A DNA stretch of 64,000 nucleotides from Phyllobates terribilis (Eukaryota). The stretch's first letter is position 1; every line of letters begins with the position of its first letter. The stretch is taken from positions 78,368,001 through 78,432,000 of the forward strand of contig NW_027362764.1 in assembly GCF_046119375.1 (NCBI RefSeq). The letters run 5' to 3'. Under the pieces are notes generated by a model. It was given only the letters and a program-made list of their open reading frames with translations. It did not search any database and had not been told where the DNA came from. The position numbers were made by a program, and so were the translations under genes. This document shows, piece by piece, positions 9,644 through 64,000 of this stretch.

Positions 9644-10384
9644 ACCCTTACAAAAATGTGGTCACATGCAGGGCAATTCATGTCCTTGTGGCACCTGTAC
9701 AGAATATTTTCTGTGAATTCCATAATGAAAATATGCACCTTATATCTAAATTTACAGGCAGCGACTTAAAATTCAGATGGATTTGGAATTAATAAGACGA
9801 TTTTAAAATTGACTGCATTCTACATCCGTTCTACATCATACGTCATCTGCATTCTACATCATATATTTGGCTAAGTAAAGGTATTGCTGAACTCGTCTTT
9901 GAAAGATCTACCTGCGCATATAAATATTTTGGGGATGTGAAATCCTGCTGACAGATTCCCTGAAATTCTTCATTCATTTGCACCTTTTTTAAATCTATTT
10001 TATGTGCTCATCTTTTTTATATTTATCATTGTGGGTAGGGTTCAGGGTTTCCTTCTGATTAATTAAATGCAACTTTTGAAAGAATCAATTTTTTTGCGCA
10101 AATGTACTCCAGAATACCCATGGAGTGATTTTTATGCATGCCTGTAATTTTTACAGAAATTTTTACGCTATTTTAGCAAAACATTTTTTTGCTCTAACAA
10201 GTCATAACACAAGTTAAAGGAAAAAAAATAAAGAGCATTTTTTATTTTGCGCAAAATTCACGAAATGTGTGCTGCAATGGAATTTGGTGCAAAATATATC
10301 ACGGTATAACACCAGATGAAAAAGTGACTTAAAAAAGAAATGCAAATAATGATTGGTTCCTAGATGTTGTGGATGACACGGCAC

Positions 10385-25508: not shown

Positions 25509-25659
25509 NNNNNNNNNNNNNNNNNNNNNNNNNNNNNNNNNNNNNNNNNNNNNNNNNNNNNNNNNNNNNNNNNNNNNNNNNNNNNNNNNNNNNNNNNNNN
25601 NNNNNNNNNNNNNNNNNNNNNNNNNNNNNNNNNNNNNNNNNNNNNNNNNNNNNNNNNNN

Positions 25660-25784: not shown

Positions 25785-26005
25785 NNNNNNNNNNNNNNNN
25801 NNNNNNNNNNNNNNNNNNNNNNNNNNNNNNNNNNNNNNNNNNNNNNNNNNNNNNNNNNNNNNNNNNNNNNNNNNNNNNNNNNNNNNNNNNNNNNNNNNNN
25901 NNNNNNNNNNNNNNNNNNNNNNNNNNNNNNNNNNNNNNNNNNNNNNNNNNNNNNNNNNNNNNNNNNNNNNNNNNNNNNNNNNNNNNNNNNNNNNNNNNNT
26001 ATATA

Positions 26006-27640
<1,635 letters not shown>

Positions 27641-28134
27641 TATCTATCNNNNNNNNNNNNNNNNNNNNNNNNNNNNNNNNNNNNNNNNNNNNNNNNNNNN
27701 NNNNNNNNNNNNNNNNNNNNNNNNNNNNNNNNNNNNNNNNNNNNNNNNNNNNNNNNNNNNNNNNNNNNNNNNNNNNNNNNNNNNNNNNNNNNNNNNNNNN
27801 NNNNNNNNNNNNNNNNNNNNNNNNNNNNNNNNNNNNNNNNNNNNNNNNNNNNNNNNNNNNNNNNNNNNNNNNNNNNNNNNNNNNNNNNNNNNNNNNNNNN
27901 NNNNNNNNNNNNNNNNNNNNNNNNNNNNNNNNNNNNNNNNNNNNNNNNNNNNNNNNNNNNNNNNNNNNNNNNNNNNNNNNNNNNNNNNNNNNNNNNNNNN
28001 NNNNNNNNNNNNNNNNNNNNNNNNNNNNNNNNNNNNNNNNNNNNNNNNNNNNNNNNNNNNNNNNNNNNNNNNNNNNNNNNNNNNNNNNNNNNNNNNNNNN
28101 NNNNNNNNNNNNNNNNNNNNNNNNNNNNNNNNNN

Positions 28135-38349: not shown

Positions 38350-38967
38350 CACGCTGAAGTCAGCTGCCGGCTTCAGTACCAGCTATAGAAGAGTTCCCAG
38401 CACGTCGAGGGAACAGGAGAAGGTGAGTAGAATCGTTTATTTTTTTTACCTTTGTTGGAGAAGAACCGCAAAACAGAGACATTACTACTGCAAGGAGCTC
38501 AGGATGGGGAACATTATGCCAGGATGAGAGACATATCTTACTGGAACTGGCCCAGGATGGGACACATTATACCAAGAAGGGGCCCAGTATGGAGTACATT
38601 ATACCAGGAAAGGAAGACATTATATCAGGAAGGCGCCAGGATGGAGGACATTATGCCTGGAAAGAAATACATTATACCAGGAAGGGGCCCAGGATGGACA
38701 TATTATACCAGAATGGCGGACATTATTACGAGAAAGGGTCCAGTATTGGGGACAAGGAAAAGCCTAGGATGGAGGACATTATTACAGGAAGGGGCCATGA
38801 TTGGGGACATTATTATTGGATGGGGGCCATTGTTACATGGGGGGTGAACATGTATATCTTCACAGGATTTGGAACGCTACAAGTGCCCATACATCTGACG
38901 AGCTTGTAGATGGTGGCCCACGTCCAAAATTTGCACCGGGGCCCATTGGACTCCAGTTGTGCCACTA
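38350..38967. mobile_element. hAT-type MITE remnant with an internal ~30-bp degenerate minisatellite (38470-38830)
   Basis: attataccaggaaggggcccaggatgg-like units. The end ccagttgtgccacta resembles the AGTTACGCCACTG terminus. Confidence 0.45.
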
Positions 38968-40476
38968 GAAAAAAGGTATTTTGACATATACTGGCCAAGC
39001 ATACCAGAAGAACGCTCATTTGGCATGTATTTGGCATAAGATTGTCTATGGGTACATTAGTAATACAGAAACATTGACCGATTGTGCTGGGAGTCTAGCC
39101 TCACTGGTATTAGAAAGGTTCATCGACAATAGCGACCTCTGGTAGTATAGTATTTTCAGTTAAAATTATAATGACAGATGGAGAGATAACTAATTACGTG
39201 AATCTGCAAATCCTATAATCCCATTATTGTATTGAATTTATTTCTCCTCTTTTATCATACAGTAGAAGAAAAAGTTAAAAAGTACATTTTCGGAATATCA
39301 ACTTTTGGATATAAAGTTTCAATAAAAAGGTATCAAGAATGGTCACACTCCAATTCACCGAATACTGACAGTTCAATTCCAACCGCGTCTGCATAATTTG
39401 AGGTTTATCGTTTACGAGTCACTTTCAATCTGTCACATTTCCAGGTCGAGTTGACTGCCGGTTATTTCAGACTGCAGATGTGTTAAGGATTTTGGCCGTC
39501 TATTAACTATGTCAGCAAAGATCATTTGCCCCCTAGTAAAAAAGGGCTGCCAGACTGATTTATATTTCGGCACTTTACTATATGGCTCTATTTATAGGGG
39601 ACGATATATTTAGCAGTAATCTCCCTACATGCCATGCGATTCACCCGAAGTTCTCAGCCTTCTCACCACATATCAAGCTGCATGACAAATGTTGGATAAA
39701 TTAAATATCATTTTATCTAATCGTACAATGTGTAAAATTATATTCTGATTATCACTTGATTTGGAAGATGTATGCACTTTCTAAATAGACACTTGTAATA
39801 TACTCATGAGAGTCACTAATTACACATAAATTAGATTTGTCTTGAAATATTAATATAAATTCGCATCGCATGCTGCAAGGGAGATACATAAAATGCTCAT
39901 TTTAAAACTTACAATTTGTTCTCCTTTGTCATCAGGGTACATGTTAATTAGGGGAAGATGACATAATATGCAAGGCTTCTTTGTAGCGCATATAATATAT
40001 GAAAATAGGTTACAGAATCTCATTGCTCTCCATGTTTCAAGGCAAGTCAAACAGAATATACAGTTGCAGTGATGAAGCACGATATGAATACTTTTTCCGA
40101 TGATTAGACAATGAGAGAAGGGGAAATGAATGAAAATAAGGTACAAAAAGATGGACATTTTTGACGCTGTTATGTCAGGACTAGATGGTGGCCCGATTCT
40201 AACGCATTGGGTATTCTAGAATATGTATGTAGATTATTTATGAAGATTTAAGAATAATGCAAAGAATACACAGGATTTTCCGGGTAAAATATATACATTA
40301 TCATTAAATTTTATTGCTCATAGAACTTAATACAACTGAACGAAATTATTAAACAGATCATCAAAATATATAAACCATTACATGAATATCTAACTGTATT
40401 TAAATAAATCATAGGACGAAAGAAGTACATCGACACTATAATATATTTGTTAACAATATCACCCCAAAATATTTTT

Positions 40477-41430
40477 TTACACCACATTTCTTGTGAATAC
40501 GTTTTGACTATCTATAAGCAACTTTCCTTGTAAAGGGGTATGAAGAACTTGCACCTTGACGTTGGATCTCATTTTAACTCTTGAAAATGCAACGTAGAGT
40601 TGTCCATGACCAAAAACGGGCTCCGGTAGATATATGCCAACACGGTGTAGAGTTTGACCTTGTGACTTGTTTATTGTCATGGCAAAAGCTGGTTTTACTG
40701 GAAACTATCGACGCCAAAGCCTAAATGGAAGACTGGTGTTCGAAGGACATAAATTAATGCGTGGAATGAACACTTTGTCTCCTTTTGCTGATCCAGTGAT
40801 CACTCTTGCTTGAATTACCTGGGAATGGAGTCCAGAAACAATAAGGCGAGTTCCATTACATAGATCATTTTTTGTATTTAGATTCCGCTGCAGCATTACG
40901 ATTGTTCCAACTTTGAGTTATAGTCTGTGGGATGGCATTCCTGATGGCGTAAGACTATTTAAAAATTAACTGGATACTGCTCTCGTTCATCTTCATTGTC
41001 TACATCCACTGAATCATCACTTTTGTACAACTTATACTTTCCAGGCATTCTATCCATCACACGGGAATTTAGCAGAGCCACGTCATCGTTCTTGGGACAG
41101 AACTCTCAACACTGCTTTGGTCGTTCACATCAATTTCAACGCATTGTCCAAAAACATCACTTACGATGCAGTCAGTGCACAACATGTCTTCTGGTATTTC
41201 AATAATGTTTTCTCCAAGGTTGTATTCGTTGCTAAGTTCACCGTTACCAAGTTTAAGAAGCCACTTGCTGTACTCTGTGTCAGAAGATCGCATGTTGTTA
41301 ATTAGTTGGAGTTTATTAAACTGTTTCCAAATGTCAGCCATTTTTAAGCTGGACTCGATAACATCTGTTCTTGTTCCATTTGGTATGACTGGAAGGCATT
41401 GCCTAAAATCTCTGCCAATGACAAAATGTG
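40477..41430 (-). pseudogene. Helitron PIF1-family helicase, C-terminal part (motifs III-VI)
   Basis: G(R)DFRQCLPV, LINNMRS, MLQRNLN...[28 protein letters not shown]. Stops and frameshifts present. Confidence 0.95.
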
Positions 41431-43420
41431 GCATTTGTAGGCGGTCCAAATACGCAGAGGTAGGCAAACAATTCACGAAGTTGCTTAGGCATATGTAGGG
41501 TAACTGAGTCTTCTAAAGTAAGTCTCTACACAATATCATCCAATAGAAGTCCTAAAGCCAAAGCTGCAGCTTTAAATGTATCGTTCAATACTCCGTTAAC
41601 AGTTTTCAAATCGTCATAACTTGTAGCTCCTTTCACATGCAGTAGTAACAGCCGAAGGCAATATCTTTCTTGATACTTGACACTAACAGTATACATGCGT
41701 CCAATTATTCTGCTAAGTCCTCATTGTCTTGGATTCCAAGTGTTATTCCAAACGTAATGCTCTGGAATCTCTCGATACAAATACTGCCTTGCGATTTCGT
41801 TACGTTGGTTCAGCAAAAACCATTCCATTAATGTTGACTTCGTGCTTAAAGTTTTTGAGACATCTTTCACTTGAGAATCTTCAAAGAAATAAAGCTGCTG
41901 TTGATTTGGTAAATGAATAGCTAAACGTATAATGGCATGGGACTGTGAATGCATTGGAAATGCAAGTATCCTCCAAGCAGCTTCTGGAGCACTCACATAT
42001 CTTGAGTCAACAAAAGTTGATGATTCTTCGTGATTGACTGTTTTCTGTTGTATTTCAACGTTAGCTTTGTCATGCCCCTTGTAGATGTACTTGAAAAGAT
42101 ATTTTACACTTTTTATTGAAGCACAGATTTCTACATTGATGTGACAGTTGTAGCGTTTTAATAAGTACGGGTTGTATGGAACTATCCATGAGTTATTTAT
42201 AATTTTTTTTGTTGCGAACAATGTTATCAATGTGTTGTCGCTGGTAGGATGGGTAGCCATCCAAGTCTTTAACAGTGTGCTGTTTGAACTCCTTTGGAAA
42301 CCCTTTTGTACACTTTCCGTTTTCCATGCATGGACTTTTTGGATTTGCTACACGCCATGGGCCATGAACCATATGAGAGACTACAATATTATACAGTTCA
42401 GGATACTTTTCTTGTTTAGGAATTTCAGCCCACACTATGTTGTCAATTTCTTCCTCCGTGTGAAACTTGGAATCCGCGTCTAAGATAATTAGTATATGCG
42501 CATGTGGGAGACCTCGTTTCTGAAACTCTATGACGTGTACCATTGCTACAACTGTTCCAAAAAGCCCATTTTTGATGTCTTTCAAAAGGCTGCTGAGTTT
42601 CAGTGAAAATACGTGTGCGACTAAGTCCGGCCTGTGTTCAACTTGTTGCCAGGGTTCTAGATTTTCGGTAATTTCCGGCCATTTTGGATTACAGGTCATT
42701 GTCACAAAAATGTCAGGTCTTCCATACTTTGTTACTATTCCCATTGAATCTTGATAACGCTGTTGCATGTTGCGGGGGCTACCTTCAAAAGACGACGGGA
42801 GAATTACTGTTTTTCCAATTGGAATTCCCTTTTGAATTGATTGTTTTTGCAAATGTTCTTGAAGAATACAGTAGTCTTCAGCTTTATGTTTTTGGTTCAT
42901 TCGTATGAAATTTAGATGATTTGCTTCAATTTTAACGTATGAGTCGACTAAGTACTGTTGTGTCAGTTTCCCACCGTTTAAAATAGGATTGAAGTAATTT
43001 CGGACAGACAGAAGAAAACTGTAGTACTGCAGTTGTGTAATTCTTCTTGAAGTTCCTTGCTGGTGTAGGTTTTCATGCCACCCTTGATCACCTCTTGGAA
43101 AGAATAACGGATACAGAAGAGCATCAAGGTTGCTGTGCAAAATGCTAATTCGTTGTGTCTTAGGAACCAAAGGGTTGTTTTGGTCTGGCTTAAGATGGAC
43201 TAATATATCCCTTTGAAAGGGAGGCTCTCCGTCATCGTTTTGAAAAACAACTGCGACCTCACTTACACGTAGTTTGTTGTAAAGTCGGGGATCCTATTTA
43301 CGTTCTTGTTTAATGGCCATGACAATAGAAGGCATTTCAGTCCCATTTTGTATAGCCCTCTGTTCCTCCTTCAACATCTTTTAGCATGCGATTTGCGGCA
43401 GCAAATGGGCTGATTTTTTG
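41431..43420 (-). pseudogene. Helitron Rep (HUH/Y2 endonuclease) region
   Basis: FVTMTCNPKW (motif 1), EFQKRGLPHAHIL (HUH), KYLFKYIYKG (Y2), YPLFFPRG, LLLLHVKGA. Confidence 0.95.
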
Positions 43421-44306
43421 TCAATGTACGGCAATTTGGTTCATCAGTTCAGCATCACACTTTTCGTTTTCTTTCAGGTTCATCCTTTGTTCTGTAGCCT
43501 CATTTGTATCAAGGATGTATAATTGTGCAAATTTTGGTGGTTGTCCTCTTTCTGGGTGAAGTGTTCCAGTGCGGTGGTAGATCTGGCCGTGAATTTTAAA
43601 ACAATACGGTCCGAATCCAGGGGGCGGTGCAATGTTGGCACCAAATGAAGCAAACACATGAGAACTGTTGATGCTTCTGATATTTTCCATAAAATTTCTA
43701 CTGTGTTGATGCGTTCCTTTCATCAACTGCTCAAACAGATCTGAGTAGTGAGGTCTCGGTAGCATAACTTTTCCTTTTTGGCAGCATTGAGTAAACTGAT
43801 TGTCAGATGGTTTTTCATCAATAAAATTCAGAGAGTCGCATTTAGAGCAAACTGCATTCATATTCCCACAGTAGTGTTCAATAATTGTAGTTTCGTTTTT
43901 CTGTTACGTAACGTGCAAGTTGTTGAATATTCTGCGGGACTTGCCTTAGCTGGTGGAGCATTCGTTTTTTATGAATTTGGCGGTCATGTTGTTGTCTGTT
44001 TGCCCTGGATTGTGGAGATTCATTCACCCCACGTTGTCTGTGGGATTCCGCATCGTGTTCCTGCCTAGCGGCAGGGTGTTGTGATGCCTCCTGTTCCCGA
44101 CGTTGTCTCTGTGAATCAGCTACTTGTACCTGTCGTGTGGCAGTTTGTTGTGGTGTTTCCTGTTGGCGACTTTGTCTGTGAGATTCCGCATCCTGGGCTT
44201 GTCTGGTGGCAGTTTGTTGAAGTGTCTCTTGCTCTCGACGTTGTCGTTGCCTTGCTGCTGCTGCTTTTCTGTCATCCTCATTGGTGTATTTTCGTTTACG
44301 ACCCAT
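43421..44306 (-). pseudogene. Helitron RepHel N-terminus: Q/R-rich repeats and Cys-rich region
   Basis: MGRKRKY..., then after a frameshift CSKC...FIDE...CCQKGKV, FASFGA, GPYCFKIHGQIYH, AQLYILD. Confidence 0.9.
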
Positions 44307-44349
44307 TGGAAAACAGGAAGCGTAAATCGTGATAGCATACAGTAAAGAA

Positions 44350-47300
44350 GTATCTGTTCAGTGCGCTGAGACTGACAGAACGTGTTCAGTAAACGTGAGT
44401 GAACTACGTGGCACTGTGACTGACAGTACTTGTTCAGTAAACGTGACTGAACTACATGGCACTGTGACTGACAGTACTTGTTTAGTAAACGTGACTGGAC
44501 TATGTGGCACTGTGACTGACAGTACTTGTTCAGTAAACGTGACTGAACTACATGGCACTGTGACTGACAGAACTTGTTCAGTAAACGTGACTGAACTACG
44601 TGGCACTGTGACTGACAGTACTTGTTCAGTAAACGTGAGTGAACTACGTGGCACTGTGACTGACAGAACTTGTTCAGTAAATGTGACTGAACTACGTGGC
44701 ACTGTGACTGACAGTACTTGTTCAGTAAACGTGACTGAACTACGTGGCACTGTGACAGACAGAACTTGTTCAGTAAATGTGACTGAACTACGTGGCACTG
44801 TGACTGACAGAACTTGTTCAGTAAACGTGACTGAACTACGTGGCACTGTGACTGACAGTACTTGTTCAGTAAACGTGACTGAACTACGTGGCACTGTGAC
44901 TGACAGTACTTGTTCAGTAAACGTGACTGAACTACGTGGCACTGTGACTGAGAGAACTTGTTCAGTAAACGTGACTAAACTACATCACACTGTGACTGAC
45001 AGAACTTGTTCAGTAAACGTGACTAAACTACATCACACTGTGACTGACAGAACTTGTTCAGTAAATGTGAGTGGACTACGTGGCACTGTGATTGACAGAA
45101 CTTGTTCAGTAAACGTGACTAAACTACGTGGCACTGTGACTGAAAGAACTTGTTCAGTAAACGTGACTGAACTACGTGGCACTGTGACTGACAGAACTTG
45201 TTCAGCAAACGTGACTGAACTACATGGCACTGTGACTGACAGAACTTGTTCAGTAAACGTGACTGAACTACGTGGCACTGTGACTGACAGTACTTGTTCA
45301 GTAAACGTGAGTGAACTACGTGGCACTGTGACTGACAGAACTTGTTCAGTAAATGTGACTGAACTACGTGGCACTGTGACTGACAGTACTTGTTCAGTAA
45401 ACGTGACTGAACTACATGGCACTGTGACTGACAGTACTTGTTTAGTAAACGTGACTGGACTATGTGGCACTGTGACTGACAGTACTTGTTCAGTAAACGT
45501 GACTGAACTACATGGCACTGTGACTGACAGAACTTGTTCAGTAAACGTGACTGAACTACGTGGCACTGTGACTGACAGTACTTGTTCAGTAAACGTGACT
45601 GAACTACGTGGCACTGTGACTGAGAGAACTTGTTCAGTAAACGTGACTGAACTACATCGCACTGTGACTGACAGAACATGTTCAGTAAACGTGACTGAAC
45701 TACGTGCACTGTGACTGACAGAAATTGTCCAGTAAACCTGACTGAACTACGTGGCACTGTGACTGACAGAACTTGTTCAGTAAATGAGAGTGAACTATGT
45801 GGCACTGTGACTGACAGAACTTGTTCACTAAACGTGAGTGAACTACATGGCACTGTGACTGACAGAACTTGCTCAGTAAACGTCAGTGAACTACGTTGCA
45901 CTGTCACTGACAGAACTTGTTCAGTAAACGTGACTGAACTACGTGGCACTGTGAGTGACAGAACTTGTTCAGTAAACGTGAGTGAACTATGTGGCACTGT
46001 GACTGACAGAACTTGTTCAGTAAACGTGACTAAACTACATCACACTGTGACTGACAGAACTTGTTCAGTAAACGTGACTAAACTACATCACACTGTGACT
46101 GGCAGAACTTGTTCAGTAAATGTGAGTGAACTACGTGGCACTGTGACTGACAGAACTTGTTCAGCAAACGTGACTGAACTACGTGGCACTGTGACTGACA
46201 GAATTTGTTCAGTAAACGTGACTGAACTACATCGCACTGTGACTGACAGAACTTGTTCAGTAAACGTGACTGAACTACGTGGCACTGTGACTGATAGAAC
46301 TTGTTCAGTAAACGTGACTGAACTACATCACACTGTGACTGACAGAACTTTTTCAGTAAATGTGAGTGAACTACGTGGCACTGTGACTGAAAGAACTAGT
46401 TCTGTAAACGTGACTGAACTACGTGGCACTGTGACTGAAAGAACCTGTTCCGTAAACGTGACTGAACTACGTGAGACTGTGACTGACAGAACTTGTTCAG
46501 TAAACGTGAGTGAACTATGTGGCACTGTGACTGACAGAACTTGTCCAGTAAACATGACTGAACTACATCACACTGTGACTGACAGAACTTGTTCAGTAAA
46601 CGTGAGTGAACTACGTGGCACTGTGACTGACAGAATTTGTTCAGTAAACGTGAGTGAACTATGTGGCACTGTGACTGACAGAACTTGTTCAGTAAACGTG
46701 ACAGAACTACGTGGCACTGTGACTGACAGTGCTTGTTCAGTAAACGTGACTAAACTACGTGGCACTGTGACTGACAGAACTTGTTCGGTAAACGTGACTA
46801 AACTATGTGGCACTGTGAGTGACAGAACTTGTTCAGTAAACGTGAGTGAACTATGTGGCACTGTGATTGACAGAACTTGTTCAGTAAACGTAACTGGATT
46901 ACATGGCACTGTGACTGACAGAACTTGTTCCGTAAACGTGACTAAACTACGTGGCACTATGAGTGACAGAACTTGTTCAGTAAACGTGAGTGAACTACAT
47001 GGCACTGTGACTGACAGAACTTGTCCAGTAAACCTGACTGAACTACATCACAGTGTGACTGACAGAAATTGTTCAGTAAATGTGAGTGAACTACGTGGCA
47101 CTGTGACTGACAGAACTTGTTTAGTAAATGTGACTGAACTACGTGGCACTGTGACTGACAGAACTTGTTCAGTAAACGTGACTAAACTACATCACACTGT
47201 GACTGACAGAACTTGTTCAGTAAACGTGAGTGAACTATGTGTCACTGTGACTGACAGAACTTGTCCAGTAAACGTGACTGAACTACATCACACTGTGACT

Positions 47301-50300
47301 GACAGAACTTCTTCAGCAAATGTGAGTGAACTACGTGGCACTGTGACTGACAGAACTTGATCAGTAAACGTGACAAAACTACGTGGCACTGTGACTGACA
47401 GAACTTGTTCAGTAAACGTGAGTGAACTACGTGGCACTGTGACTGACAGAACTTGTTCAGTAAACGTGACTAAACTACGTGGCACTGTGACTGACAGGAC
47501 TTGTTCAGCAAATGTGAGTGAACTACGTGGCACTGTGACTGACAGAACTTATTCAGTAAATGTGACTGAACTACATGGCACTGTGACTGACAGAACTTGT
47601 TCAGTAAACATGACTAAACTACGTGGCACTGTGAGTGACAGAACTTGTTCAGTAAACGTGAGTGAACTACGTGGCACTGTGACTGACAGAACTTGTTCAG
47701 TAAACGTGACTAAACTACATCACACTGTGACTGACAGAACTTGTTCAGTAAACGTGACTAAACTACATCACACTGTGACTGGCAGAACTTGTTCAGTAAA
47801 TGTGAGTGAACTACGTGGCACTGTGATTGACAGAACTTGTTCAGTAAACGTGACTAAACTACGTGGCACTGTGACTGAAAGAACTTGTTCAGTAAACGTG
47901 ACTGAACTACGTGGCACTGTGACTGACAGAACTTGTTCAGCAAATGTGACTGAACTACGTGGCACTGTGACTGACAGAATTTGTTCAGTAAACGTGACTG
48001 AACTACATCGCACTGTGACTGACAGAACTTGTTCAGTAAATGTGACTGAACTACGTGGCACTGTGACTGATAGAACTTGTTCAGTAAACGTGACTGAACT
48101 ACATCACACTGTGACTGACAGAACTTTTTCAGTAAATGTGAGTGAACTACGTGGCACTGTGACTGAAAGAACTTGTTCTGCAAACGTGACTAAACTACGT
48201 GGCACTGTGACTGAAAGAACCTGTTCCGTAAACGTGACTGAACTACGTGGGACTGTGACTGACAGAACTTGTTCAGTAAACGTGAGTGAACTATGTGGCA
48301 CTGTGACTGACAGAACTTGTCCAGTAAACATGACTGAACTACATCACACTGTGACTGACAGAACTTGTTCAGTAAACGTGAGTGAACTACGTGGCACTGT
48401 GACTGACAGAATTTGTTCAGTAAACGTGAGTGAACTATGTGGCACTGTGACTGACAGAACTTGTTCAGTAAACGTGACAGAACTACGTGGCACTGTGACT
48501 GACAGTGCTTGTTCAGTAAACGTGACTAAACTATGTGGCACTGTGACTGACAGAACTTGTTCGGTAAACGTGACTAAACTATGTGGCACTGTGAGTGACA
48601 GAACTTGTTCAGTAAACGTGAGTGAACTATGTGGCACTGTGATTGACAGAACTTGTTCAGTAAACGTAACTGGATTACATGGCACTGTGACTGACAGAAC
48701 TTGTTCCGTAAACGTGACTAAACTACGTGGCACTATGAGTGACAGAACTTGTTCAGTAAACGTGAGTGAACTACATGGCACTGTGACTGACAGAACTTGT
48801 CCAGTAAACCTGACTGAACTACATCACAGTGTGACTGACAGAAATTGTTCAGTAAATGTGAGTGAACTACGTGGCACTGTGACTGACAGAACTTGTTTAG
48901 TAAATGTGACTGAACTACGTGGCACTGTGACTGACAGAACTTGTTCAGTAAACGTGACTGAACTACATCACACTGTGACTGACAGAACTTGTTCAGTAAA
49001 CGTGAGTGAACTATGTGTCACTGTGACTGACAGAACTTGTCCAGTAAACGTGATTGAACTACATCACACTGTGACTGACAGAACTTGTTCAGCAAATGTG
49101 AGTGAACTACGTGGCACTGTGACTGACAGAACTTGTTCAGTAAACGTGACTAAACTACGTGGCACTGTGACTGACAGAACTTGTTCAGTAAACGTGAGTG
49201 AACTACGTGGCACTATGACTGACAGAACTTTTTCTGTAAACGTGACTAAACTACGTGGCACTGTGACTGACAGGACTTGTTCAGCAAATGTGAGTGAACT
49301 ACGTGGCACTGTGACTGACAGAACTTGTTCAGTAAATGTGACTGAACTACATGGCACTGTGACTGACAGAACTTGTTCAGTAAACATGACTAAACTACGT
49401 GGCACTGTGAGTGACAGAACTTGTTCAGTAAACGTGAGTGAACTACGTGGCACTGTGACTGACAGAACTTGTTCAGTAAACGTGACTAAACTACATCACA
49501 CTGTGACTGACAGAACTTGTTCAGTAAACGTGACTAAACTACATCACACTGTGACTGACAGAACTTGTTCAGTAAATGTGAGTGAACTACATGGCACTGT
49601 GATTGACAGAACTTGTTCAGTAAACGTGACTAAACTACGTGGCACTGTGACTGAAAGAACTTGTTCAGTAAACGTGACTGAACTACGTGGCACTGTGACT
49701 GACAGAACTTGTTCAGCAAACGTGACTGAACTACGTGGCACTGTGACTGACAGAACTTGTTCAGTAAACGTGACTGAACTACGTGGCACTGTGACTGATA
49801 GAACTTGTTCAGTAAACGTGACTGAACTACATCACACTGTGACTGACAGAACTTTTTCAGTAAATGTGAGTGAACTACGTGGCACTGTGACTGAAAGAAC
49901 TTGTTCTGTAAACGTGACTGAACTATGTGGCACTGTGACTGAAAGAACCTGTTCCGTAAACGTGACTGAACTACGTGGGACTGTGACTGACAGAACTTGT
50001 TCAGTAAACGTGAGTGAACTATGTGGCACTGTGACTGACAGAACTTGTCCAGTAAACATGACTGAACTACATCACACTGTGACTGACAGAACTTGTTCAG
50101 TAAACGTGAGTGAACTACGTGGCACTGTGACTGACAGAATTTGTTCAGTAAACGTGAGTGAACTATGTGGCACTGTGACTGACAGAACTTGTTCAGTAAA
50201 CGTGACAGAACTACGTGGCACAGTGACTGACAGTGCTTGTTCAGTAAACGTGACTAAACTACGTGGCACTGTGACTGACAGAACTTGTTCGGTAAACGTG

Positions 50301-53300: not shown

Positions 53301-56300
53301 GATAGAACTTGTTCAGTAAACGTGACTGAACTACATCACACTGTGACTGACAGAACTTTTTCAGTAAATGTGAGTGAACTACGTGGCACTGTGACTGAAA
53401 GAACTTGTTCTGCAAACGTGACTAAACTACGTGGCACTGTGACTGAAAGAACCTGTTCCGTAAACGTGACTGAACTACGTGGGACTGTGACTGACAGAAC
53501 TTGTTCAGTAAACGTGAGTGAACTATGTGGCACTGTGACTGACAGAACTTGTCCAGTAAACATGACTGAACTACATCACACTGTGACTGACAGAACTTGT
53601 TCAGTAAACGTGAGTGAACTACGTGGCACTGTGACTGACAGAATTTGTTCAGTAAACGTGAGTGAACTATGTGGCACTGTGACTGACAGAACTTGTTCAG
53701 TAAACGTGACAGAACTACGTGGCACTGTGACTGACAGTGCTTGTTCAGTAAACGTGACTAAACTATGTGGCACTGTGACTGACAGAACTTGTTCGGTAAA
53801 CGTGACTAAACTATGTGGCACTGTGAGTGACAGAACTTGTTCAGTAAACGTGAGTGAACTATGTGGCACTGTGATTGACAGAACTTGTTCAGTAAACGTA
53901 ACTGGATTACATGGCACTGTGACTGACAGAACTTGTTCCGTAAACGTGACTAAACTACGTGGCACTATGAGTGACAGAACTTGTTCAGTAAACGTGAGTG
54001 AACTACATGGCACTGTGACTGACAGAACTTGTCCAGTAAACCTGACTGAACTACATCACAGTGTGACTGACAGAAATTGTTCAGTAAATGTGAGTGAACT
54101 ACGTGGCACTGTGACTGACAGAACTTGTTTAGTAAATGTGACTGAACTACGTGGCACTGTGACTGACAGAACTTGTTCAGTAAACGTGACTGAACTACAT
54201 CACACTGTGACTGACAGAACTTGTTCAGTAAACGTGAGTGAACTATGTGTCACTGTGACTGACAGAACTTGTCCAGTAAACGTGATTGAACTACATCACA
54301 CTGTGACTGACAGAACTTGTTCAGCAAATGTGAGTGAACTACGTGGCACTGTGACTGACAGAACTTGTTCAGTAAACGTGACTAAACTACGTGGCACTGT
54401 GACTGACAGAACTTGTTCAGTAAACGTGAGTGAACTACGTGGCACTATGACTGACAGAACTTTTTCTGTAAACGTGACTAAACTACGTGGCACTGTGACT
54501 GACAGGACTTGTTCAGCAAATGTGAGTGAACTACGTGGCACTGTGACTGACAGAACTTGTTCAGTAAATGTGACTGAACTACATGGCACTGTGACTGACA
54601 GAACTTGTTCAGTAAACATGACTAAACTACGTGGCACTGTGAGTGACAGAACTTGTTCAGTAAACGTGAGTGAACTACGTGGCACTGTGACTGACAGAAC
54701 TTGTTCAGTAAACGTGACTAAACTACATCACACTGTGACTGACAGAACTTGTTCAGTAAACGTGACTAAACTACATCACACTGTGACTGACAGAACTTGT
54801 TCAGTAAATGTGAGTGAACTACATGGCACTGTGATTGACAGAACTTGTTCAGTAAACGTGACTAAACTACGTGGCACTGTGACTGAAAGAACTTGTTCAG
54901 TAAACGTGACTGAACTACGTGGCACTGTGACTGACAGAACTTGTTCAGCAAACGTGACTGAACTACGTGGCACTGTGACTGACAGAACTTGTTCAGTAAA
55001 CGTGACTGAACTACGTGGCACTGTGACTGATAGAACTTGTTCAGTAAACGTGACTGAACTACATCACACTGTGACTGACAGAACTTTTTCAGTAAATGTG
55101 AGTGAACTACGTGGCACTGTGACTGAAAGAACTTGTTCTGTAAACGTGACTGAACTATGTGGCACTGTGACTGAAAGAACCTGTTCCGTAAACGTGACTG
55201 AACTACGTGGGACTGTGACTGACAGAACTTGTTCAGTAAACGTGAGTGAACTATGTGGCACTGTGACTGACAGAACTTGTCCAGTAAACATGACTGAACT
55301 ACATCACACTGTGACTGACAGAACTTGTTCAGTAAACGTGAGTGAACTACGTGGCACTGTGACTGACAGAATTTGTTCAGTAAACGTGAGTGAACTATGT
55401 GGCACTGTGACTGACAGAACTTGTTCAGTAAACGTGACAGAACTACGTGGCACAGTGACTGACAGTGCTTGTTCAGTAAACGTGACTAAACTACGTGGCA
55501 CTGTGACTGACAGAACTTGTTCGGTAAACGTGACTAAACTATGTGGCACTGTGAGTGACAGAACTTGTTCAGTAAACGTGAGTGAACTATGTGGCACTGT
55601 GATTGACAGAACTTGTTCAGTAAACGTAACTGGATTACATGGCACTGTGACTGACAGAACTTGTTCCGTAAACATGACTAAACTACGTGGCACTATGAGT
55701 GACAGAACTTATTCAGTAAACGTGAGTGAACTACATGGCACTGTGACTGACAGAACTTGTCCAGTAAACCTGACTGAACTACATCACAGTGTGACTGACA
55801 GAAATTGTTCAGTAAATGTGAGTGAACTACGTGGCACTGTGACTGACAGAACTTGTTTAGTAAATGTGACTGAACTACGTGGCACTGTGACTGACAGAAC
55901 TTGTTCAGTAAACGTGACTAAACTACATCACACTGTGACTGACAGAACTTGTTCAGTAAACGTGAGTGAACTATGTGTCACTGTGACTGACAGAACTTGT
56001 CCAGTAAACGTGACTGAACTACATCACACTGTGACTGACAGAACTTCTTCAGCAAATGTGAGTGAACTACGTGGCACTGTGACTGACAGAACTTGATCAG
56101 TAAACGTGACAAAACTACGTGGCACTGTGACTGACAGAACTTGTTCAGTAAACGTGAGTGAACTACGTGGCACTGTGACTGACAGAACTTGTTCAGTAAA
56201 CGTGACTAAACTACGTGGCACTGTGACTGACAGGACTTGTTCAGCAAATGTGAGTGAACTACGTGGCACTGTGACTGACAGAACTTGTTCAGTAAATGTG

Positions 56301-59300
56301 ACTGAACTACATGGCACTGTGACTGACAGAACTTGTTCAGTAAACATGACTAAACTACGTGGCACTGTGAGTGACAGAACTTGTTCAGTAAACGTGAGTG
56401 AACTACGTGGCACTGTAACTGACAGAACTTGTTCAGTAAACGTGACTAAACTACATCACACTGTGACTGACAGAACTTGTTCAGTAAACGTGACTAAACT
56501 ACATCACACTGTGACTGGCAGAACTTGTTCAGTAAATGTGAGTGAACTACGTGGCACTGTGATTGACAGAACTTGTTCAGTAAACGTGACTAAACTACGT
56601 GGCACTGTGACTGAAAGAACTTGTTCAGTAAACGTGACTGAACTACGTGGCACTGTGACTGACAGAACTTGTTCAGCAAATGTGACTGAACTACGTGGCA
56701 CTGTGACTGACAGAATTTGTTCAGTAAACGTGACTGAACTACATCGCACTGTGACTGACAGAACTTGTTCAGTAAATGTGACTGAACTACGTGGCACTGT
56801 GACTGATAGAACTTGTTCAGTAAACGTGACTGAACTACATCACACTGTGACTGACAGAACTTTTTCAGTAAATGTGAGTGAACTACGTGGCACTGTGACT
56901 GAAAGAACTTGTTCTGCAAACGTGACTAAACTACGTGGCACTGTGACTGAAAGAACCTGTTCCGTAAACGTGACTGAACTACGTGGGACTGTGACTGACA
57001 GAACTTGTTCAGTAAACGTGAGTGAACTATGTGGCACTGTGACTGACAGAACTTGTCCAGTAAACATGACTGAACTACATCACACTGTGACTGACAGAAC
57101 TTGTTCAGTAAACGTGAGTGAACTACGTGGCACTGTGACTGACAGAATTTGTTCAGTAAACGTGAGTGAACTATGTGGCACTGTGACTGACAGAACTTGT
57201 TCAGTAAACGTGACAGAACTACGTGGCACTGTGACTGACAGTGCTTGTTCAGTAAACGTGACTAAACTATGTGGCACTGTGACTGACAGAACTTGTTCGG
57301 TAAACGTGACTAAACTATGTGGCACTGTGAGTGACAGAACTTGTTCAGTAAACGTGAGTGAACTATGTGGCACTGTGATTGACAGAACTTGTTCAGTAAA
57401 CGTAACTGGATTACATGGCACTGTGACTGACAGAACTTGTTCCGTAAACGTGACTAAACTACGTGGCACTATGAGTGACAGAACTTGTTCAGTAAACGTG
57501 AGTGAACTACATGGCACTGTGACTGACAGAACTTGTCCAGTAAACCTGACTGAACTACATCACAGTGTGACTGACAGAAATTGTTCAGTAAATGTGAGTG
57601 AACTACGTGGCACTGTGACTGACAGAACTTGTTTAGTAAATGTGACTGAACTACGTGGCACTGTGACTGACAGAACTTGTTCAGTAAACGTGACTGAACT
57701 ACATCACACTGTGACTGACAGAACTTGTTCAGTAAACGTGAGTGAACTATGTGTCACTGTGACTGACAGAACTTGTCCAGTAAACGTGATTGAACTACAT
57801 CACACTGTGACTGACAGAACTTGTTCAGCAAATGTGAGTGAACTACGTGGCACTGTGACTGACAGAACTTGTTCAGTAAACGTGACTAAACTACGTGGCA
57901 CTGTGACTGACAGAACTTGTTCAGTAAACGTGAGTGAACTACGTGGCACTATGACTGACAGAACTTTTTCTGTAAACGTGACTAAACTACGTGGCACTGT
58001 GACTGACAGGACTTGTTCAGCAAATGTGAGTGAACTACGTGGCACTGTGACTGACAGAACTTGTTCAGTAAATGTGACTGAACTACATGGCACTGTGACT
58101 GACAGAACTTGTTCAGTAAACATGACTAAACTACGTGGCACTGTGAGTGACAGAACTTGTTCAGTAAACGTGAGTGAACTACGTGGCACTGTGACTGACA
58201 GAACTTGTTCAGTAAACGTGACTAAACTACATCACACTGTGACTGACAGAACTTGTTCAGTAAACGTGACTAAACTACATCACACTGTGACTGACAGAAC
58301 TTGTTCAGTAAATGTGAGTGAACTACATGGCACTGTGATTGACAGAACTTGTTCAGTAAACGTGACTAAACTACGTGGCACTGTGACTGAAAGAACTTGT
58401 TCAGTAAACGTGACTGAACTACGTGGCACTGTGACTGACAGAACTTGTTCAGCAAACGTGACTGAACTACGTGGCACTGTGACTGACAGAACTTGTTCAG
58501 TAAACGTGACTGAACTACGTGGCACTGTGACTGATAGAACTTGTTCAGTAAACGTGACTGAACTACATCACACTGTGACTGACAGAACTTTTTCAGTAAA
58601 TGTGAGTGAACTACGTGGCACTGTGACTGAAAGAACTTGTTCTGTAAACGTGACTGAACTATGTGGCACTGTGACTGAAAGAACCTGTTCCGTAAACGTG
58701 ACTGAACTACGTGGGACTGTGACTGACAGAACTTGTTCAGTAAACGTGAGTGAACTATGTGGCACTGTGACTGACAGAACTTGTCCAGTAAACATGACTG
58801 AACTGCATCACACTGTGACTGACAGAACTTGTTCAGTAAACGTGAGTGAACTACGTGGCACTGTGACTGACAGAATTTGTTCAGTAAACGTGAGTGAACT
58901 ATGTGGCACTGTGACTGACAGAACTTGTTCAGTAAACGTGACAGAACTACGTGGCACAGTGACTGACAGTGCTTGTTCAGTAAACGTGACTAAACTACGT
59001 GGCACTGTGACTGACAGAACTTGTTCGGTAAACGTGACTAAACTATGTGGCACTGTGAGTGACAGAACTTGTTCAGTAAACGTGAGTGAACTATGTGGCA
59101 CTGTGATTGACAGAACTTGTTCAGTAAACGTAACTGGATTACATGGCACTGTGACTGACAGAACTTGTTCCGTAAACATGACTAAACTACGTGGCACTAT
59201 GAGTGACAGAACTTGTTCAGTAAACGTGAGTGAACTACATGGCACTGTGACTGACAGAACTTGTCCAGTAAACCTGACTGAACTACATCACAGTGTGACT

Positions 59301-62300
59301 GACAGAAATTGTTCAGTAAATGTGAGTGAACTACGTGGCACTGTGACTGACAGAACTTGTTTAGTAAATGTGACTGAACTACGTGGCACTGTGACTGACA
59401 GAACTTGTTCAGTAAACGTGACTAAACTACATCACACTGTGACTGACAGAACTTGTTCAGTAAACGTGAGTGAACTATGTGTCACTGTGACTGACAGAAC
59501 TTGTCCAGTAAACGTGACTAAACTACATCACACTGTGACTGACAGAACTTCTTCAGCAAATGTGAGTGAACTACGTGGCACTGTGACTGACAGAACTTGA
59601 TCAGTAAACGTGACAAAACTACGTGGCACTGTGACTGACAGAACTTGTTCAGTAAACGTGAGTGAACTACGTGGCACTGTGACTGACAGAACTTGTTCAG
59701 TAAACGTGACTAAACTACGTGGCACTGTGACTGACAGGACTTGTTCAGCAAATGTGAGTGAACTACGTGGCACTGTGACTGACAGAACTTGTTCAGTAAA
59801 TGTGACTGAACTAAATGGCACTGTGACTGACAGAACTTGTTCAGTAAACATGACTAAACTACGTGGCACTGTGAGTGACAGAACTTGTTCAGTAAACGTG
59901 AGTGAACTACGTGGCACTGTGACTGACAGAACTTGTTCAGTAAACGTGACTAAACTACATCACACTGTGACTGACAGAACTTGTTCAGTAAACGTGACTA
60001 AACTACATCACACTGTGACTGGCAGAACTTGTTCAGTAAATGTGAGTGAACTACGTGGCACTGTGATTGACAGAACTTGTTCAGTAAACGTGACTAAACT
60101 ACGTGGCACTGTGACTGAAAGAACTTGTTCAGTAAACGTGACTGAACTACGTGGCACTGTGACTGACAGAACTTGTTCAGCAAATGTGACTGAACTACGT
60201 GGCACTGTGACTGACAGAATTTGTTCAGTAAACGTGACTGAACTACATCGCACTGTGACTGACAGAACTTGTTCAGTAAATGTGACTGAACTACGTGGCA
60301 CTGTGACTGATAGAACTTGTTCAGTAAACGTGACTGAACTACATCACACTGTGACTGACAGAACTTTTTCAGTAAATGTGAGTGAACTACGTGGCACTGT
60401 GACTGAAAGAACTTGTTCTGCAAACGTGACTAAACTACGTGGCACTGTGACTGAAAGAACCTGTTCCGTAAACGTGACTGAACTACGTGGGACTGTGACT
60501 GACAGAACTTGTTCAGTAAACGTGAGTGAACTATGTGGCACTGTGACTGACAGAACTTGTCCAGTAAACATGACTGAACTACATCACACTGTGACTGACA
60601 GAACTTGTTCAGTAAACGTGAGTGAACTACGTGGCACTGTGACTGACAGAATTTGTTCAGTAAACGTGAGTGAACTATGTGGCACTGTGACTGACAGAAC
60701 TTGTTCAGTAAACGTGACAGAACTACGTGGCACTGTGACTGACAGTGCTTGTTCAGTAAACGTGACTAAACTATGTGGCACTGTGACTGACAGAACTTGT
60801 TCGGTAAACGTGACTAAACTATGTGGCACTGTGAGTGACAGAACTTGTTCAGTAAACGTGAGTGAACTATGTGGCACTGTGATTGACAGAACTTGTTCAG
60901 TAAACGTAACTGGATTACATGGCACTGTGACTGACAGAACTTGTTCCGTAAACGTGACTAAACTACGTGGCACTATGAGTGACAGAACTTGTTCAGTAAA
61001 CGTGAGTGAACTACATGGCACTGTGACTGACAGAACTTGTCCAGTAAACCTGACTGAACTACATCACAGTGTGACTGACAGAAATTGTTCAGTAAATGTG
61101 AGTGAACTACGTGGCACTGTGACTGACAGAACTTGTTTAGTAAATGTGACTGAACTACGTGGCACTGTGACTGACAGAACTTGTTCAGTAAACGTGACTG
61201 AACTACATCACACTGTGACTGACAGAACTTGTTCAGTAAACGTGAGTGAACTATGTGTCACTGTGACTGACAGAACTTGTCCAGTAAATGTGATTGAACT
61301 ACATCACACTGTGACTGACAGAACTTGTTCAGCAAATGTGAGTGAACTACGTGGCACTGTGACTGACAGAACTTGTTCAGTAAACGTGACTAAACTACGT
61401 GGCACTGTGACTGACAGAACTTGTTCAGTAAACGTGAGTGAACTACGTGGCACTATGACTGACAGAACTTTTTCTGTAAACGTGACTAAACTACGTGGCA
61501 CTGTGACTGACAGGACTTGTTCAGCAAATGTGAGTGAACTACGTGGCACTGTGACTGACAGAACTTGTTCAGTAAATGTGACTGAACTACATGGCACTGT
61601 GACTGACAGAACTTGTTCAGTAAACATGACTAAACTACGTGGCACTGTGAGTGACAGAACTTGTTCAGTAAACGTGAGTGAACTACGTGGCACTGTGACT
61701 GACAGAACTTGTTCAGTAAACGTGACTAAACTACATCACACTGTGACTGACAGAACTTGTTCAGTAAACGTGACTAAACTACATCACACTGTGACTGACA
61801 GAACTTGTTCAGTAAATGTGAGTGAACTACATGGCACTGTGATTGACAGAACTTGTTCAGTAAACGTGACTAAACTACGTGGCACTGTGACTGAAAGAAC
61901 TTGTTCAGTAAACGTGACTGAACTACGTGGCACTGTGACTGACAGAACTTGTTCAGCAAACGTGACTGAACTACGTGGCACTGTGACTGACAGAACTTGT
62001 TCAGTAAACGTGACTGAACTACGTGGCACTGTGACTGATAGAACTTGTTCAGTAAACGTGACTGAACTACATCACACTGTGACTGACAGAACTTTTTCAG
62101 TAAATGTGAGTGAACTACGTGGCACTGTGACTGAAAGAACTTGTTCTGTAAACGTGACTGAACTATGTGGCACTGTGACTGAAAGAACCTGTTCCGTAAA
62201 CGTGACTGAACTACGTGGGACTGTGACTGACAGAACTTGTTCAGTAAACGTGAGTGAACTATGTGGCACTGTGACTGACAGAACTTGTCCAGTAAACATG

Positions 62301-64000
62301 ACTGAACTACATCACACTGTGACTGACAGAACTTGTTCAGTAAACGTGAGTGAACTACGTGGCACTGTGACTGACAGAATTTGTTCAGTAAACGTGAGTG
62401 AACTATGTGGCACTGTGACTGACAGAACTTGTTCAGTAAACGTGACAGAACTACGTGGCACAGTGACTGACAGTGCTTGTTCAGTAAACGTGACTAAACT
62501 ACGTGGTACTGTGACTGACAGAACTTGTTCGGTAAACGTGACTAAACTATGTGGCACTGTGAGTGACAGAACTTGTTCAGTAAACGTGAGTGAACTATGT
62601 GGCACTGTGATTGACAGAACTTGTTCAGTAAACGTAACTGGATTACATGGCACTGTGACTGACAGAACTTGTTCCGTAAACATGACTAAACTACGTGGCA
62701 CTATGAGTGACAGAACTTGTTCAGTAAACGTGAGTGAACTACATGGCACTGTGACTGACAGAACTTGTCCAGTAAACCTGACTGAACTACATCACAGTGT
62801 GACTGACAGAAATTGTTCAGTAAATGTGAGTGAACTATGTGTCACTGTGACTGACAGAACTTGTCCAGTAAACGTGATTGAACTACATCACAGTGTGACT
62901 GACAGAAATTGTTCAGTAAATGTGACTGAACTACATGGCACTGTGACTGACAGAACTTGTTCAGTAAACATGACTAAACTACGTGGCACTGTGACTGACA
63001 GGACTTGTTCAGCAAATGTGAGTGAACTACGTGGCACTGTGACTGACAGAACTTGTTCAGTAAATGTGACTGAACTACATGGCACTGTGACTGACAGAAC
63101 TTGTTCAGTAAACATGACTAAACTACGTGGCACTGTGAGTGACAGAACTTGTTCAGTAAACGTGACTGAACTACATCACACTGTGACTGACAGAACTTGT
63201 CCAGTAAACGTGAGTGAACTACGTGGCACTGTGACTGACAGAACTTGTTCAGTAAACGTGACTGAACTACATCACACTGTGACTGACAGAACTTGTCCAG
63301 TAAACGTGAGTGAACTACGTGGCACTGTGACTGACAGAACTTTTCCAGTAAACGTGACTGAACTACATCACACTGTGCCTGACAGAACTTGTTCAGTAAA
63401 TGTGAGTTAACTACATGGCACTGTGACTGACAGAACTTGTTCAGTAAATGTGAGTTAACTACGTGGCACTGTGACTGACAGAACTTGTCCAGTAAACCTG
63501 ACTGAACTACATCACACTGTGACTGACAGAAATTGTTCAGTAAATGTGAGTGAACTACGTGGCACTGTGACTGACAGAACTTGTTTAGTAAACGTGACTG
63601 AACTACGTGGCACTGTGACTGACAGAACTTGTTCAGTAAACGTGACTGAACTACATCACACTGTGACTGACAGAACTTGTTCAGTAAACGTGAGTGAACT
63701 ATGTGGCACTGTGACTGACAGAACTTGTCCAGTAAACGTGACTGAACTACATCACACTGTGACTGACAGAACTTGTTCAGTAAATGTGACTAAACTACGT
63801 GGCACTGTGACTGACAGAACTTGTTCAGTAAACGTGAGTGAACTACGTGGCACTGTGACTGACAGAACTTGTTCAGTAAACATGACTAAACTACGTGGCA
63901 CTGAGACTGACAGAACTTGTTCAGTAAACGTGACTGAACTACATCACACTGTGACTGACAGAACTTTTTCAGTAAATGTGAGTGAACTATGTGGCACTGT
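44350..64000. repeat. 48-bp satellite, ~410 monomers in window, with higher-order structure; continues past the window
   Basis: Consensus gtgactgacagaacttgttcagtaaacgtgactgaactacgtggcact. Diagnostic variants recur at 1728, 1776 and 3504 bp. Confidence 0.99.

What the first reader, a model, noticed from the sequence alone, without database searches (positions are those of the whole stretch)
40181..64000. Helitron whose upstream region is a >=19.6-kb satellite array
Seen: a Helitron 3' terminus (hairpin + CTAG|T at 40181) and a RepHel ORF on the minus strand. A 48-bp array starts only ~45 bp upstream of the putative ATG (44306) and runs off the window. No Helitron 5' terminus was noticed between the ATG and the array. 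Known: Helitron-internal tandem repeats can seed satellites (e.g. Drosophila DINE-1 central repeats), usually in non-autonomous elements. Inference: a satellite is growing inside the 5' leader of an autonomous-type Helitron, making the element more than 24 kb long. This links a rolling-circle transposon to satellite birth.
Basis: partly seen in the sequence, partly recalled or inferred. Interest (0 to 1): 0.78.

Follow-up and report, generated by a model that had tools for sequence, protein, structure and literature searches.

The report
Dead Helitron with expanded leader satellite
A broken rolling-circle transposon (Helitron) in a poison-frog genome carries a 48-base repeat in front of its gene, and here that repeat has multiplied to at least 409 copies (19.6 kb); transposons seeding satellite DNA is already known, so this is a clear new example, not a new kind.

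Summary
Observation confirmed. A 48-bp array (409 monomers, 44366-64000) starts 59 bp upstream of the start codon of a minus-strand RepHel gene. The gene ends in a true Helitron 3' terminus (CTAG|T at 40181).

Contigs of four runs from three related species diverge at 40180 into hundreds of different AT-rich flanks. Copies from four frog genera share the last ~45 bp and then differ.

The RepHel gene is dead: at least 6 frame changes, and two deletions that remove the ATP-binding half of the helicase.

The main inference holds at family level. A Phyllobates terribilis copy, bounded by A|TC...CTAG|T, has one 50-bp monomer-like unit at the same place. That unit lies about 1 kb inside the 5' end, behind a 67-bp CCAAT array. 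In two sister species, ORF-less derivatives join monomers straight to the 3' UTR.

Three things are not shown: that this copy still has its 5' end (off the window), that the satellite was born here, and whether the repeat arose in the Helitron or was captured by it. More distant copies (Ranitomeya, Anomaloglossus) lack the monomer.

Higher-order repeats of 3504 bp that are 99-100% identical point to recent local amplification.

Helitron-borne satellites are known from Drosophila, oysters and Xenopus. This scan had already noted this same array, CCAAT arrays in this Helitron family, and satellite arrays inside hAT transposons elsewhere in this genome.

The parts
40181..40184 (-). Helitron 3' terminus CTAG, followed by host T (40180)
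   Evidence: Loose ends at 40180 in 65/61/259/465 contigs of 4 runs, agreement about 0.4, AT-rich. Homology of L002, L003 and L004 stops here.
40192..40211 (-). Subterminal 3' hairpin (stem 40206-40211 / 40192-40197, 8-nt loop); one stem mismatch in this copy
   Evidence: CCCGAT...ATCGGG is conserved in L002 and L003. L002 form: -7.4 kcal/mol, z -2.17. Window form is not significant.
40185..40476 (-). 3' untranslated region; its last ~45-200 bp are shared with a far more abundant non-autonomous family
   Evidence: Summed contig depth at 40188-40384 is 5-500 times that of the ORF bins. Loose ends at 40229-40232 and 40277 lead into CCAAT-unit-like sequence.
40477..44306 (-). RepHel pseudogene (8 or more ORF pieces, at least 6 frame changes, two deletions of about 0.58 and 0.69 kb near 41685 and 41430)
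   Evidence: ORF list, Pfam, tblastn against L004 ORFs. L004 PIF1 aa 240-453 is largely missing here.
42193..43170 (-). Rep (HUH nuclease) domain, longest open piece, 325 aa
   Evidence: PF14214 E 3.9e-58, profile 1-191. 89-93% identical to D. tinctorius and P. terribilis proteins.
44027..44245 (-). 69-bp coding tandem repeat in the N-terminus of RepHel (3.2 copies)
   Evidence: TRF. 5.1 copies in L002 and 4.8 in L004.
44307..44365 (-). Unique leader between the ATG and the array; homologous to the leaders of L002 and L004
   Evidence: Pairwise alignments.
44366..45709 (-). Proximal part of the 48-bp array (28 monomers), no higher-order period, closest to consensus
45710..64000 (-). Distal part of the 48-bp array with nested higher-order repeats (36/37-mers of 1728/1776 bp; 73-mer of 3504 bp, 99-100% identical); runs off the window
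   Evidence: Shift-identity analysis; TRF.

Best explanation
This is a dead copy of a canonical (TC...CTAG) Helitron family of dendrobatid poison frogs. The family's 5' leader is built of tandem repeats.

The family layout, read from a bounded Phyllobates copy, is:
- 5' TCTA-TATATAAT end;
- CCAAT palindromes and a 67-bp array;
- a short spacer;
- a 48-50-bp unit directly in front of the ATG;
- RepHel;
- 3' hairpin and CTAG.

In the window's copy that 48-bp unit has been amplified in place to at least 409 monomers (at least 19.6 kb). The likely steps are slippage or unequal exchange between neighbouring units, followed by tandem duplication of 1.7-kb and 3.5-kb blocks, which gives the higher-order repeats.

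ORF-less derivatives that keep monomers plus the 3' end exist in sister species. They can spread seeds of the repeat through the genome.

Shown: the termini, the pseudogene state, the array structure, and the position of the monomer inside the family.

Inferred: that the growth happened after insertion and without the transposase, and that the 5' part of the element still lies beyond the array.
For: 3' terminus and copy-number step at 40180: flank depth 3-20 in the bins 39400-39990, element in the thousands; four genera share the end, flanks differ.

L002 is bounded A|TC (8435) ... CTAG|T (11491). It has its 67-bp CCAAT array at 8875-9333 and one monomer-like unit at 9432-9481 (80-86% to window monomers, best E 1.8e-9), followed by the conserved leader and the ATG position. 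The same 5' end follows a 3' CTAG directly in L003.

Loose-end consensus behind 40229 matches the L002 CCAAT unit and L002's own pre-terminal sequence. This ties the CCAAT array to the family.

Joints 40488>44370 occur in species B (side 57) and C (side 37, 2 contigs). Further joints run from 40224-40231 or 40440-40488 to monomer positions. A contig of species C spans 44217-44424, covering ORF start, leader and first monomer (table 8, record 16).

The left flank is unique DNA with no monomers anywhere in 1-44300, so the element did not land inside an array.

Higher-order copies are 99-100% identical, against 92-93% identity of this Helitron to its nearest copies. The gene is broken.
Against: The 5' end of this copy is not in the window, so it is not shown that the array is still enclosed.

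Only one bounded relative (L002) shows the monomer, as about 1.4 degenerate units. Copies from Ranitomeya (L003) and Anomaloglossus (L004) have none within 10 kb.

The monomer has no significant similarity to the older leader or to the family's 67-bp and 69-bp repeats, so an origin from Helitron sequence is not demonstrated.

The joints rest on short contigs (sides 22-57 letters) laid at 85% likeness.

The 92-93% figure mixes copy age with divergence between family lineages, so 'array younger than insertion' is an inference.
Confidence: 0.72

Rival explanations
1. Capture, not birth. The 48-bp repeat was a host satellite first. An ancestor of the dendrobatine Helitron subfamily picked up one or a few monomers into its leader. 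The long array here is either an expansion of captured monomers or the result of exchange between the element's monomers and a host array.
For: The monomer is absent from the Anomaloglossus and Ranitomeya copies. It is not similar to their leader or to other Helitron repeats. Summed depth of monomer bins exceeds that of the ORF in all three species. [quoted passage not shown]
Against: No standalone array was seen; none could be searched for. The array starts exactly where the family carries its unit, in the same orientation. The depth figures are explicitly not copy numbers.
Confidence: 0.18
2. Mere neighbours. A 5'-truncated Helitron fragment happens to abut an unrelated satellite.
For: The 5' end is not seen. 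The copy is degraded.
Against: L002 carries the monomer between its own CCAAT array and the ATG, at the same position and orientation. Homology of leaders runs through to the first monomer. Monomer to 3' UTR joints occur in two other species.
Confidence: 0.03
3. The array's size and higher-order pattern are partly an assembly artefact, that is, mis-assembled near-identical 3.5-kb blocks.
For: Several 960-bp bins are 100% identical at a shift of 3504 bp. Such blocks are hard to assemble.
Against: The register is kept over 409 monomers with one indel. There are 83 variants in an ordered nested pattern. The monomer is abundant in independent runs of two samples of the same species.
Confidence: 0.07

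Closest known systems
Heli1Xen1 and Heli2Xen of Xenopus (Mob DNA 2025, PMC12001565)
   Same: They are frog Helitrons. Heli1Xen1 starts with TC and ends with CTAG, and has a TA-rich left end (TATATAAA) and a CCCG...CGGG-type 3' hairpin, as this family does. Heli2Xen carries 166-bp minisatellites at both ends of its autonomous copy and gives Helitron-derived tandem arrays.
   Different: The Xenopus arrays have 2-7 repeats of 121-1996 nt. Here a 48-bp unit reaches at least 409 copies with higher-order structure. The repeat sits in the leader of a canonical Helitron1-type element, whereas that paper found more arrays from Helitron2.
DINE-1 / DINE-TR1 Helitrons of Drosophila (Dias et al. 2015, cited in PMC12692304)
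   Same: Central tandem repeats of a Helitron expand into satellite-like arrays. Non-autonomous copies spread the repeats.
   Different: Those are non-autonomous insect elements. Here the repeat lies directly upstream of a RepHel gene, in a vertebrate. My knowledge of DINE-TR1 detail comes from memory and the review's citation and was not tested here.
Helentron-borne satDNA-like repeats of the Pacific oyster (PMC7492417)
   Same: Short satellite-like arrays are carried and dispersed by non-autonomous Helitron-superfamily elements, and also occur as longer arrays.
   Different: Those are Helentrons, with different termini and an endonuclease lineage. This family has canonical TC...CTAG ends, and no endonuclease domain was found.
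Satellite arrays inside hAT transposons and CCAAT arrays in Helitron leaders of this same genome (scan notes s1-198884, s1-196784, s1-234824, s1-234818)
   Same: Repeats between a transposon end and its transposase gene have grown to 16-21 kb in dead copies. The 67-bp CCAAT array of the Helitron leader is the one I see in L002.
   Different: Those involve a different transposon superfamily (hAT) or a different repeat (67 bp). They are unchecked notes. I only verified the CCAAT array in L002 and in the loose ends.

Membership tests
Canonical Helitron (Helitron1) | RepHel protein: HUH Rep domain plus PIF1-like helicase | tested here: met
   PF14214 E 3.9e-58; PIF1, Pif1_2B and helicase C-terminal remnants. 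The gene is degraded: frame changes and loss of the PIF1 N-terminal half.
Canonical Helitron (Helitron1) | 3' end CTRR followed by host T | tested here: met
   CTAG|T at 40181-40184/40180. Hundreds of contigs diverge there. Conserved in 4 genera.
Canonical Helitron (Helitron1) | Short hairpin about 10 nt upstream of the 3' end | tested here: met
   CCCGAT-8 nt-ATCGGG lies 7 nt before CTAG in the family. It is weakened by one mismatch in this copy.
Canonical Helitron (Helitron1) | 5' end TC preceded by host A | not testable with these tools
   This copy's 5' end lies beyond 64000. In relative L002 the end is A|TC at 8434/8435, supported by L003.
Canonical Helitron (Helitron1) | No endonuclease domain (separates it from Helentron) | tested here: inconclusive
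   No such Pfam hit in any ORF piece of the window or of L004. The genes are broken, so absence is weak evidence.
Transposon-borne satellite DNA (Helitron-associated tandem repeats) | Monomer lies between the element's termini in independent copies | tested here: met
   L002: the unit at 9432-9481 lies inside an element spanning 8435-11491. Monomer to 3' UTR joints occur in species B and C.
Transposon-borne satellite DNA (Helitron-associated tandem repeats) | Expansion of the internal repeat into a long array | tested here: met
   409 monomers, at least 19.6 kb.
Transposon-borne satellite DNA (Helitron-associated tandem repeats) | Monomer derived from the transposon's own sequence | tested here: inconclusive
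   No significant similarity to the older leader (L004), to the 67-bp units or to the 69-bp units.
Transposon-borne satellite DNA (Helitron-associated tandem repeats) | Standalone arrays elsewhere in the genome | not testable with these tools
   No tool searches frog genomes by DNA. The reads tool was used once.
Higher-order-repeat satellite | Blocks of several monomers much more alike than neighbouring monomers | tested here: met
   89% identity at a shift of 48 bp against 99-100% at 3504 bp from about 46.3 kb onwards.

The most novel reading that the evidence does not exclude
Non-autonomous derivatives of this Helitron family (monomers plus the 3' end) act as the vehicle that seeds the 48-bp repeat at many sites in giant poison-frog genomes. 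Several of those seeds have grown independently into long higher-order arrays. On this reading a canonical vertebrate Helitron is a main source of one satellite family, with lineage-specific expansion in the window's species.
Probability: 0.2. Interest if true: 0.55.

Novelty: new member of a known kind. Interest (0 to 1): 0.38.

Why it matters
It gives a clean vertebrate case in which both stages of a transposon-linked satellite can be seen in related genomes. One stage is a single unit in the leader of a bounded Helitron. The other is a 409-unit higher-order array at the same position in a dead copy. This could help explain how very large frog genomes gather tandem DNA, and it gives a testable locus for the 'library of seeds spread by transposons' idea. 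It does not change what is known about Helitrons or about satellite origin.

Tried and rejected
- Folding the window's own 3' end gave no significant hairpin. The family form explains this.
- BLAST of 39500-44400 against the window found no second copy and no monomer left of 44363.
- A fuzzy-regex monomer scan timed out and was replaced by blastn-short.
- A protein word search with the N-terminal 142-aa ORF found nothing. The same search with the 461-aa ORF read from the satellite also found nothing, so no further loci could be fetched that way. Given the length window of that tool, these blanks say little.
- I tested whether the monomer derives from the older leader (L004), the L002 leader, the 67-bp CCAAT array or the 69-bp coding repeat. 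None was significant.
- Rfam found no match in 39800-46500, so an origin from a known small RNA gene is not indicated.
- Growth of the array by rolling-circle re-initiation was rejected. The 48-bp unit holds no Helitron termini, and the nested 1728/1776/3504-bp pattern is that of tandem block duplication.
Full report
**What is in the sequence**

TRF reports one array at 44366-64000 with periods that are multiples of 48 (score 30926, 89-90% matches, no indels). Cutting it on the consensus gives 409 monomers, one 1-bp deletion at 45709 and 83 variants.

Identity between neighbouring monomers is about 89%. From about 46.3 kb onwards, blocks shifted by 3504 bp (73 monomers) are 99-100% identical, with an inner alternation of 1728 and 1776 bp. 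The first 28 monomers next to the gene are not part of that pattern and lie closest to the consensus. This agrees with the scan's other note on the same array (s1-230144).

On the minus strand an ORF starts with ATG at 44306, 59 bp from the array.

**The gene**

Pfam finds a complete Helitron_like_N domain in the 325-aa piece 42193-43170 (E 3.9e-58). It finds only the C-terminal third of PIF1 (profile 143-220), plus 2B and C-terminal helicase remnants, further on.

Against the fuller Anomaloglossus copy (L004), the window's reading frame changes at least six times. Two stretches are missing: about 0.58 kb near 41685 and about 0.69 kb near 41430. The second takes away most of the PIF1 core, including the AAA/P-loop part (L004 ORF aa 157-388; PIF1 at aa 240-453).

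Other copies in the reads lack one base at 42203-42205, where the window changes frame (table 4). So this is a dead copy and not an autonomous element.

**The organism**

The best protein matches to the Rep piece are from Dendrobates tinctorius (89%), Phyllobates terribilis (93%), Anomaloglossus (78%) and Ranitomeya (72%). Runs of the window's species and two relatives hold the single-copy flank at 100% and about 95-96% identity respectively. The genome is a dendrobatid poison frog; I cannot name the species.

**The 3' end**

I laid contigs of four runs (three species) on 39400-45300.
- The three flank bins 39400-39990 have a summed depth of 3-20; the next bin (39991-40187), which contains the terminus, is already in the thousands, as is everything behind it.
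- At 40180, 65, 61, 259 and 465 contigs run off into different AT-rich sequence (agreement about 0.4).
- Copies fetched from four genera share the last ~45 bp up to CTAG and T, and are unrelated beyond.
- The family hairpin is CCCGAT, 8 nt, ATCGGG, 7 nt before CTAG. In L002 it folds at -7.4 kcal/mol, z -2.2.
- The window copy has A for G in the stem, which is why its own fold is not significant.

**The 3' terminal stretch is shared with a non-autonomous family**

The stretch 40188-40384 is 5-500 times deeper than the ORF bins, depending on the run. Most such contigs leave the window's sequence at 40229-40232 or 40277 and enter a CG-rich sequence with CAATCAG. That sequence matches the 67-bp CCAAT units of L002 and L002's own pre-terminal stretch. 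An abundant non-autonomous family therefore shares this 3' end.

**Is the satellite inside the Helitron?**

The P. terribilis locus L002 decides most of this. Homology to the window runs from the 3' terminus (L002 11444-11492, 98%) through a truncated ORF up to the ATG position.

Upstream of that lie, in order:
- the conserved leader;
- one 50-bp unit at 9432-9481, 80-86% identical to window monomers (best E 1.8e-9), plus a partial second unit;
- about 100 bp of spacer;
- a 67-bp CCAAT array at 8875-9333;
- palindromes, a (GTCT)n run and the sequence TCTAATATATATAAT preceded by A at 8434/8435.

The same end sequence follows directly on the CTAG of another Helitron in the Ranitomeya locus L003, a head-to-tail pair. 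L002 is therefore a 3,057-bp element bounded A|TC...CTAG|T, and the monomer unit lies about 1 kb inside it.

The scan's notes on this genome also describe CCAAT arrays between the 5' end and RepHel (s1-234824, s1-234818). I confirmed that only in L002 and in the loose ends.

Two more lines agree.
- In species B and C, contigs join 40488 (just before the stop codon) to 44370 (first monomer), with sides of 57 and 37 letters. Others join 40224-40231 or 40440-40487 to various monomer positions (table 5). These are ORF-less derivatives made of monomers plus the 3' part.
- A contig of species C spans 44217-44424 (ORF start, leader, first monomer) at 87% identity. That is too low for the orthologous site and fits another copy with the same junction (table 8).

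The rival 'landed in an array' fails. DNA left of 40181 is unique, and no monomer occurs anywhere in 1-44300. No match to the family 5' end lies in or near the array or leader; the only two loose hits, at 9.8 and 23.4 kb, are within what chance allows.

**What is not shown**

- The 5' part of this copy lies beyond 64000, so 'an element of more than 24 kb' is untested.
- The monomer is missing from the Ranitomeya (66% identical family) and Anomaloglossus (82%) copies within 10 kb.
- The monomer is not significantly similar to the older leader, the 67-bp units or the 69-bp coding repeat. Whether the repeat arose from Helitron sequence or was captured from the host is open.
- The monomer is abundant in three species and present in Phyllobates, so the satellite was not born at this locus. 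This is one large local expansion.
- Depth figures from contigs are not copy numbers, and I use them only for the step at the terminus.

**How it most likely works**

The 5' part of this family is repeat-prone. It holds a 67-bp CCAAT array, the 48-bp unit, and a 69-bp coding repeat whose copy number differs between copies (3.2, 5.1 and 4.8).

A leader with one to two units gives the substrate for slippage or unequal exchange. Once several units exist, unequal crossing-over and block duplication produce arrays and higher-order repeats.

Here the 3.5-kb blocks are 99-100% alike, whereas the Helitron is a frame-shifted, deleted copy only 92-93% identical to its nearest known relatives. Growth in place, after insertion and without the transposase, is therefore the best reading; this is an inference.

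Rolling-circle re-initiation is rejected, because the 48-bp unit has no termini. Rfam finds no known RNA in the unit or the leader.

**Comparison with what is known**

[quoted passage not shown] Examples are DINE-TR1 in Drosophila and Helentron-borne repeats in oysters (PMC7492417).

In Xenopus, Heli1Xen1 has TC...CTAG ends, a TATATAAA-rich left end and a 3' hairpin very like this family. Heli2Xen carries 166-bp minisatellites at both ends of its autonomous copy, with arrays of 2-7 units (PMC12001565).

I found no paper on Helitron satellites in poison frogs.

This is a new member of a known kind. What it adds is a vertebrate canonical Helitron, a repeat placed directly in front of the transposase gene, and a very large higher-order expansion. 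The scan has also described comparable 16-21-kb arrays in hAT transposons of this genome (unchecked).

**Limits of the work**

Only one reads call and three protein word searches were allowed. Two of the word searches (N-terminal ORF, satellite ORF) were blank. N runs at 25509-25659, 25785-25999 and 27649-28134 were left alone.

Noticed in passing
window 44027-44245; L002 9582-9935; L004 9179-9507: A 69-bp tandem repeat lies inside the N-terminal coding part of RepHel (basic, Q/R-rich). Its copy number differs between copies: 3.2, 5.1 and 4.8.
   Followed up: partly
window 40185-40384: The last ~45-200 bp of the element are 5-500 times deeper in contig depth than the ORF bins in all four runs. 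Most such contigs continue into CCAAT-unit sequence, so a very abundant non-autonomous family shares this 3' end.
   Followed up: partly
L003 14746-14900: Head-to-tail Helitrons in Ranitomeya imitator: the CTAG of one element is followed at once by the TCTACTATATAAT 5' end of the next.
   Followed up: partly
window 39520-40174 (table 8, record 26): A contig of sister species B follows the unique flank up to 40174 and then has 226 more letters that do not fit the Helitron. This may be an empty site in that species. The letters could not be read.
   Followed up: no
L003 7846-8520 and 7051-7254: Other tandem repeats (168 bp x4, 13 bp x16) lie upstream of the Ranitomeya RepHel copy. This suggests that repeat-rich leaders are general in these frog Helitrons.
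   Followed up: no
L004 8190-8537 and 9066-9100: In the Anomaloglossus copy the N-terminal coding part occurs twice, about 0.9 kb apart, with GT...AG-like borders between. This may be an intron or a partial duplication.
   Followed up: no
window 38549-38738: A short 32/52-bp tandem repeat lies in the unique left flank and is unrelated to the 48-bp monomer.
   Followed up: no
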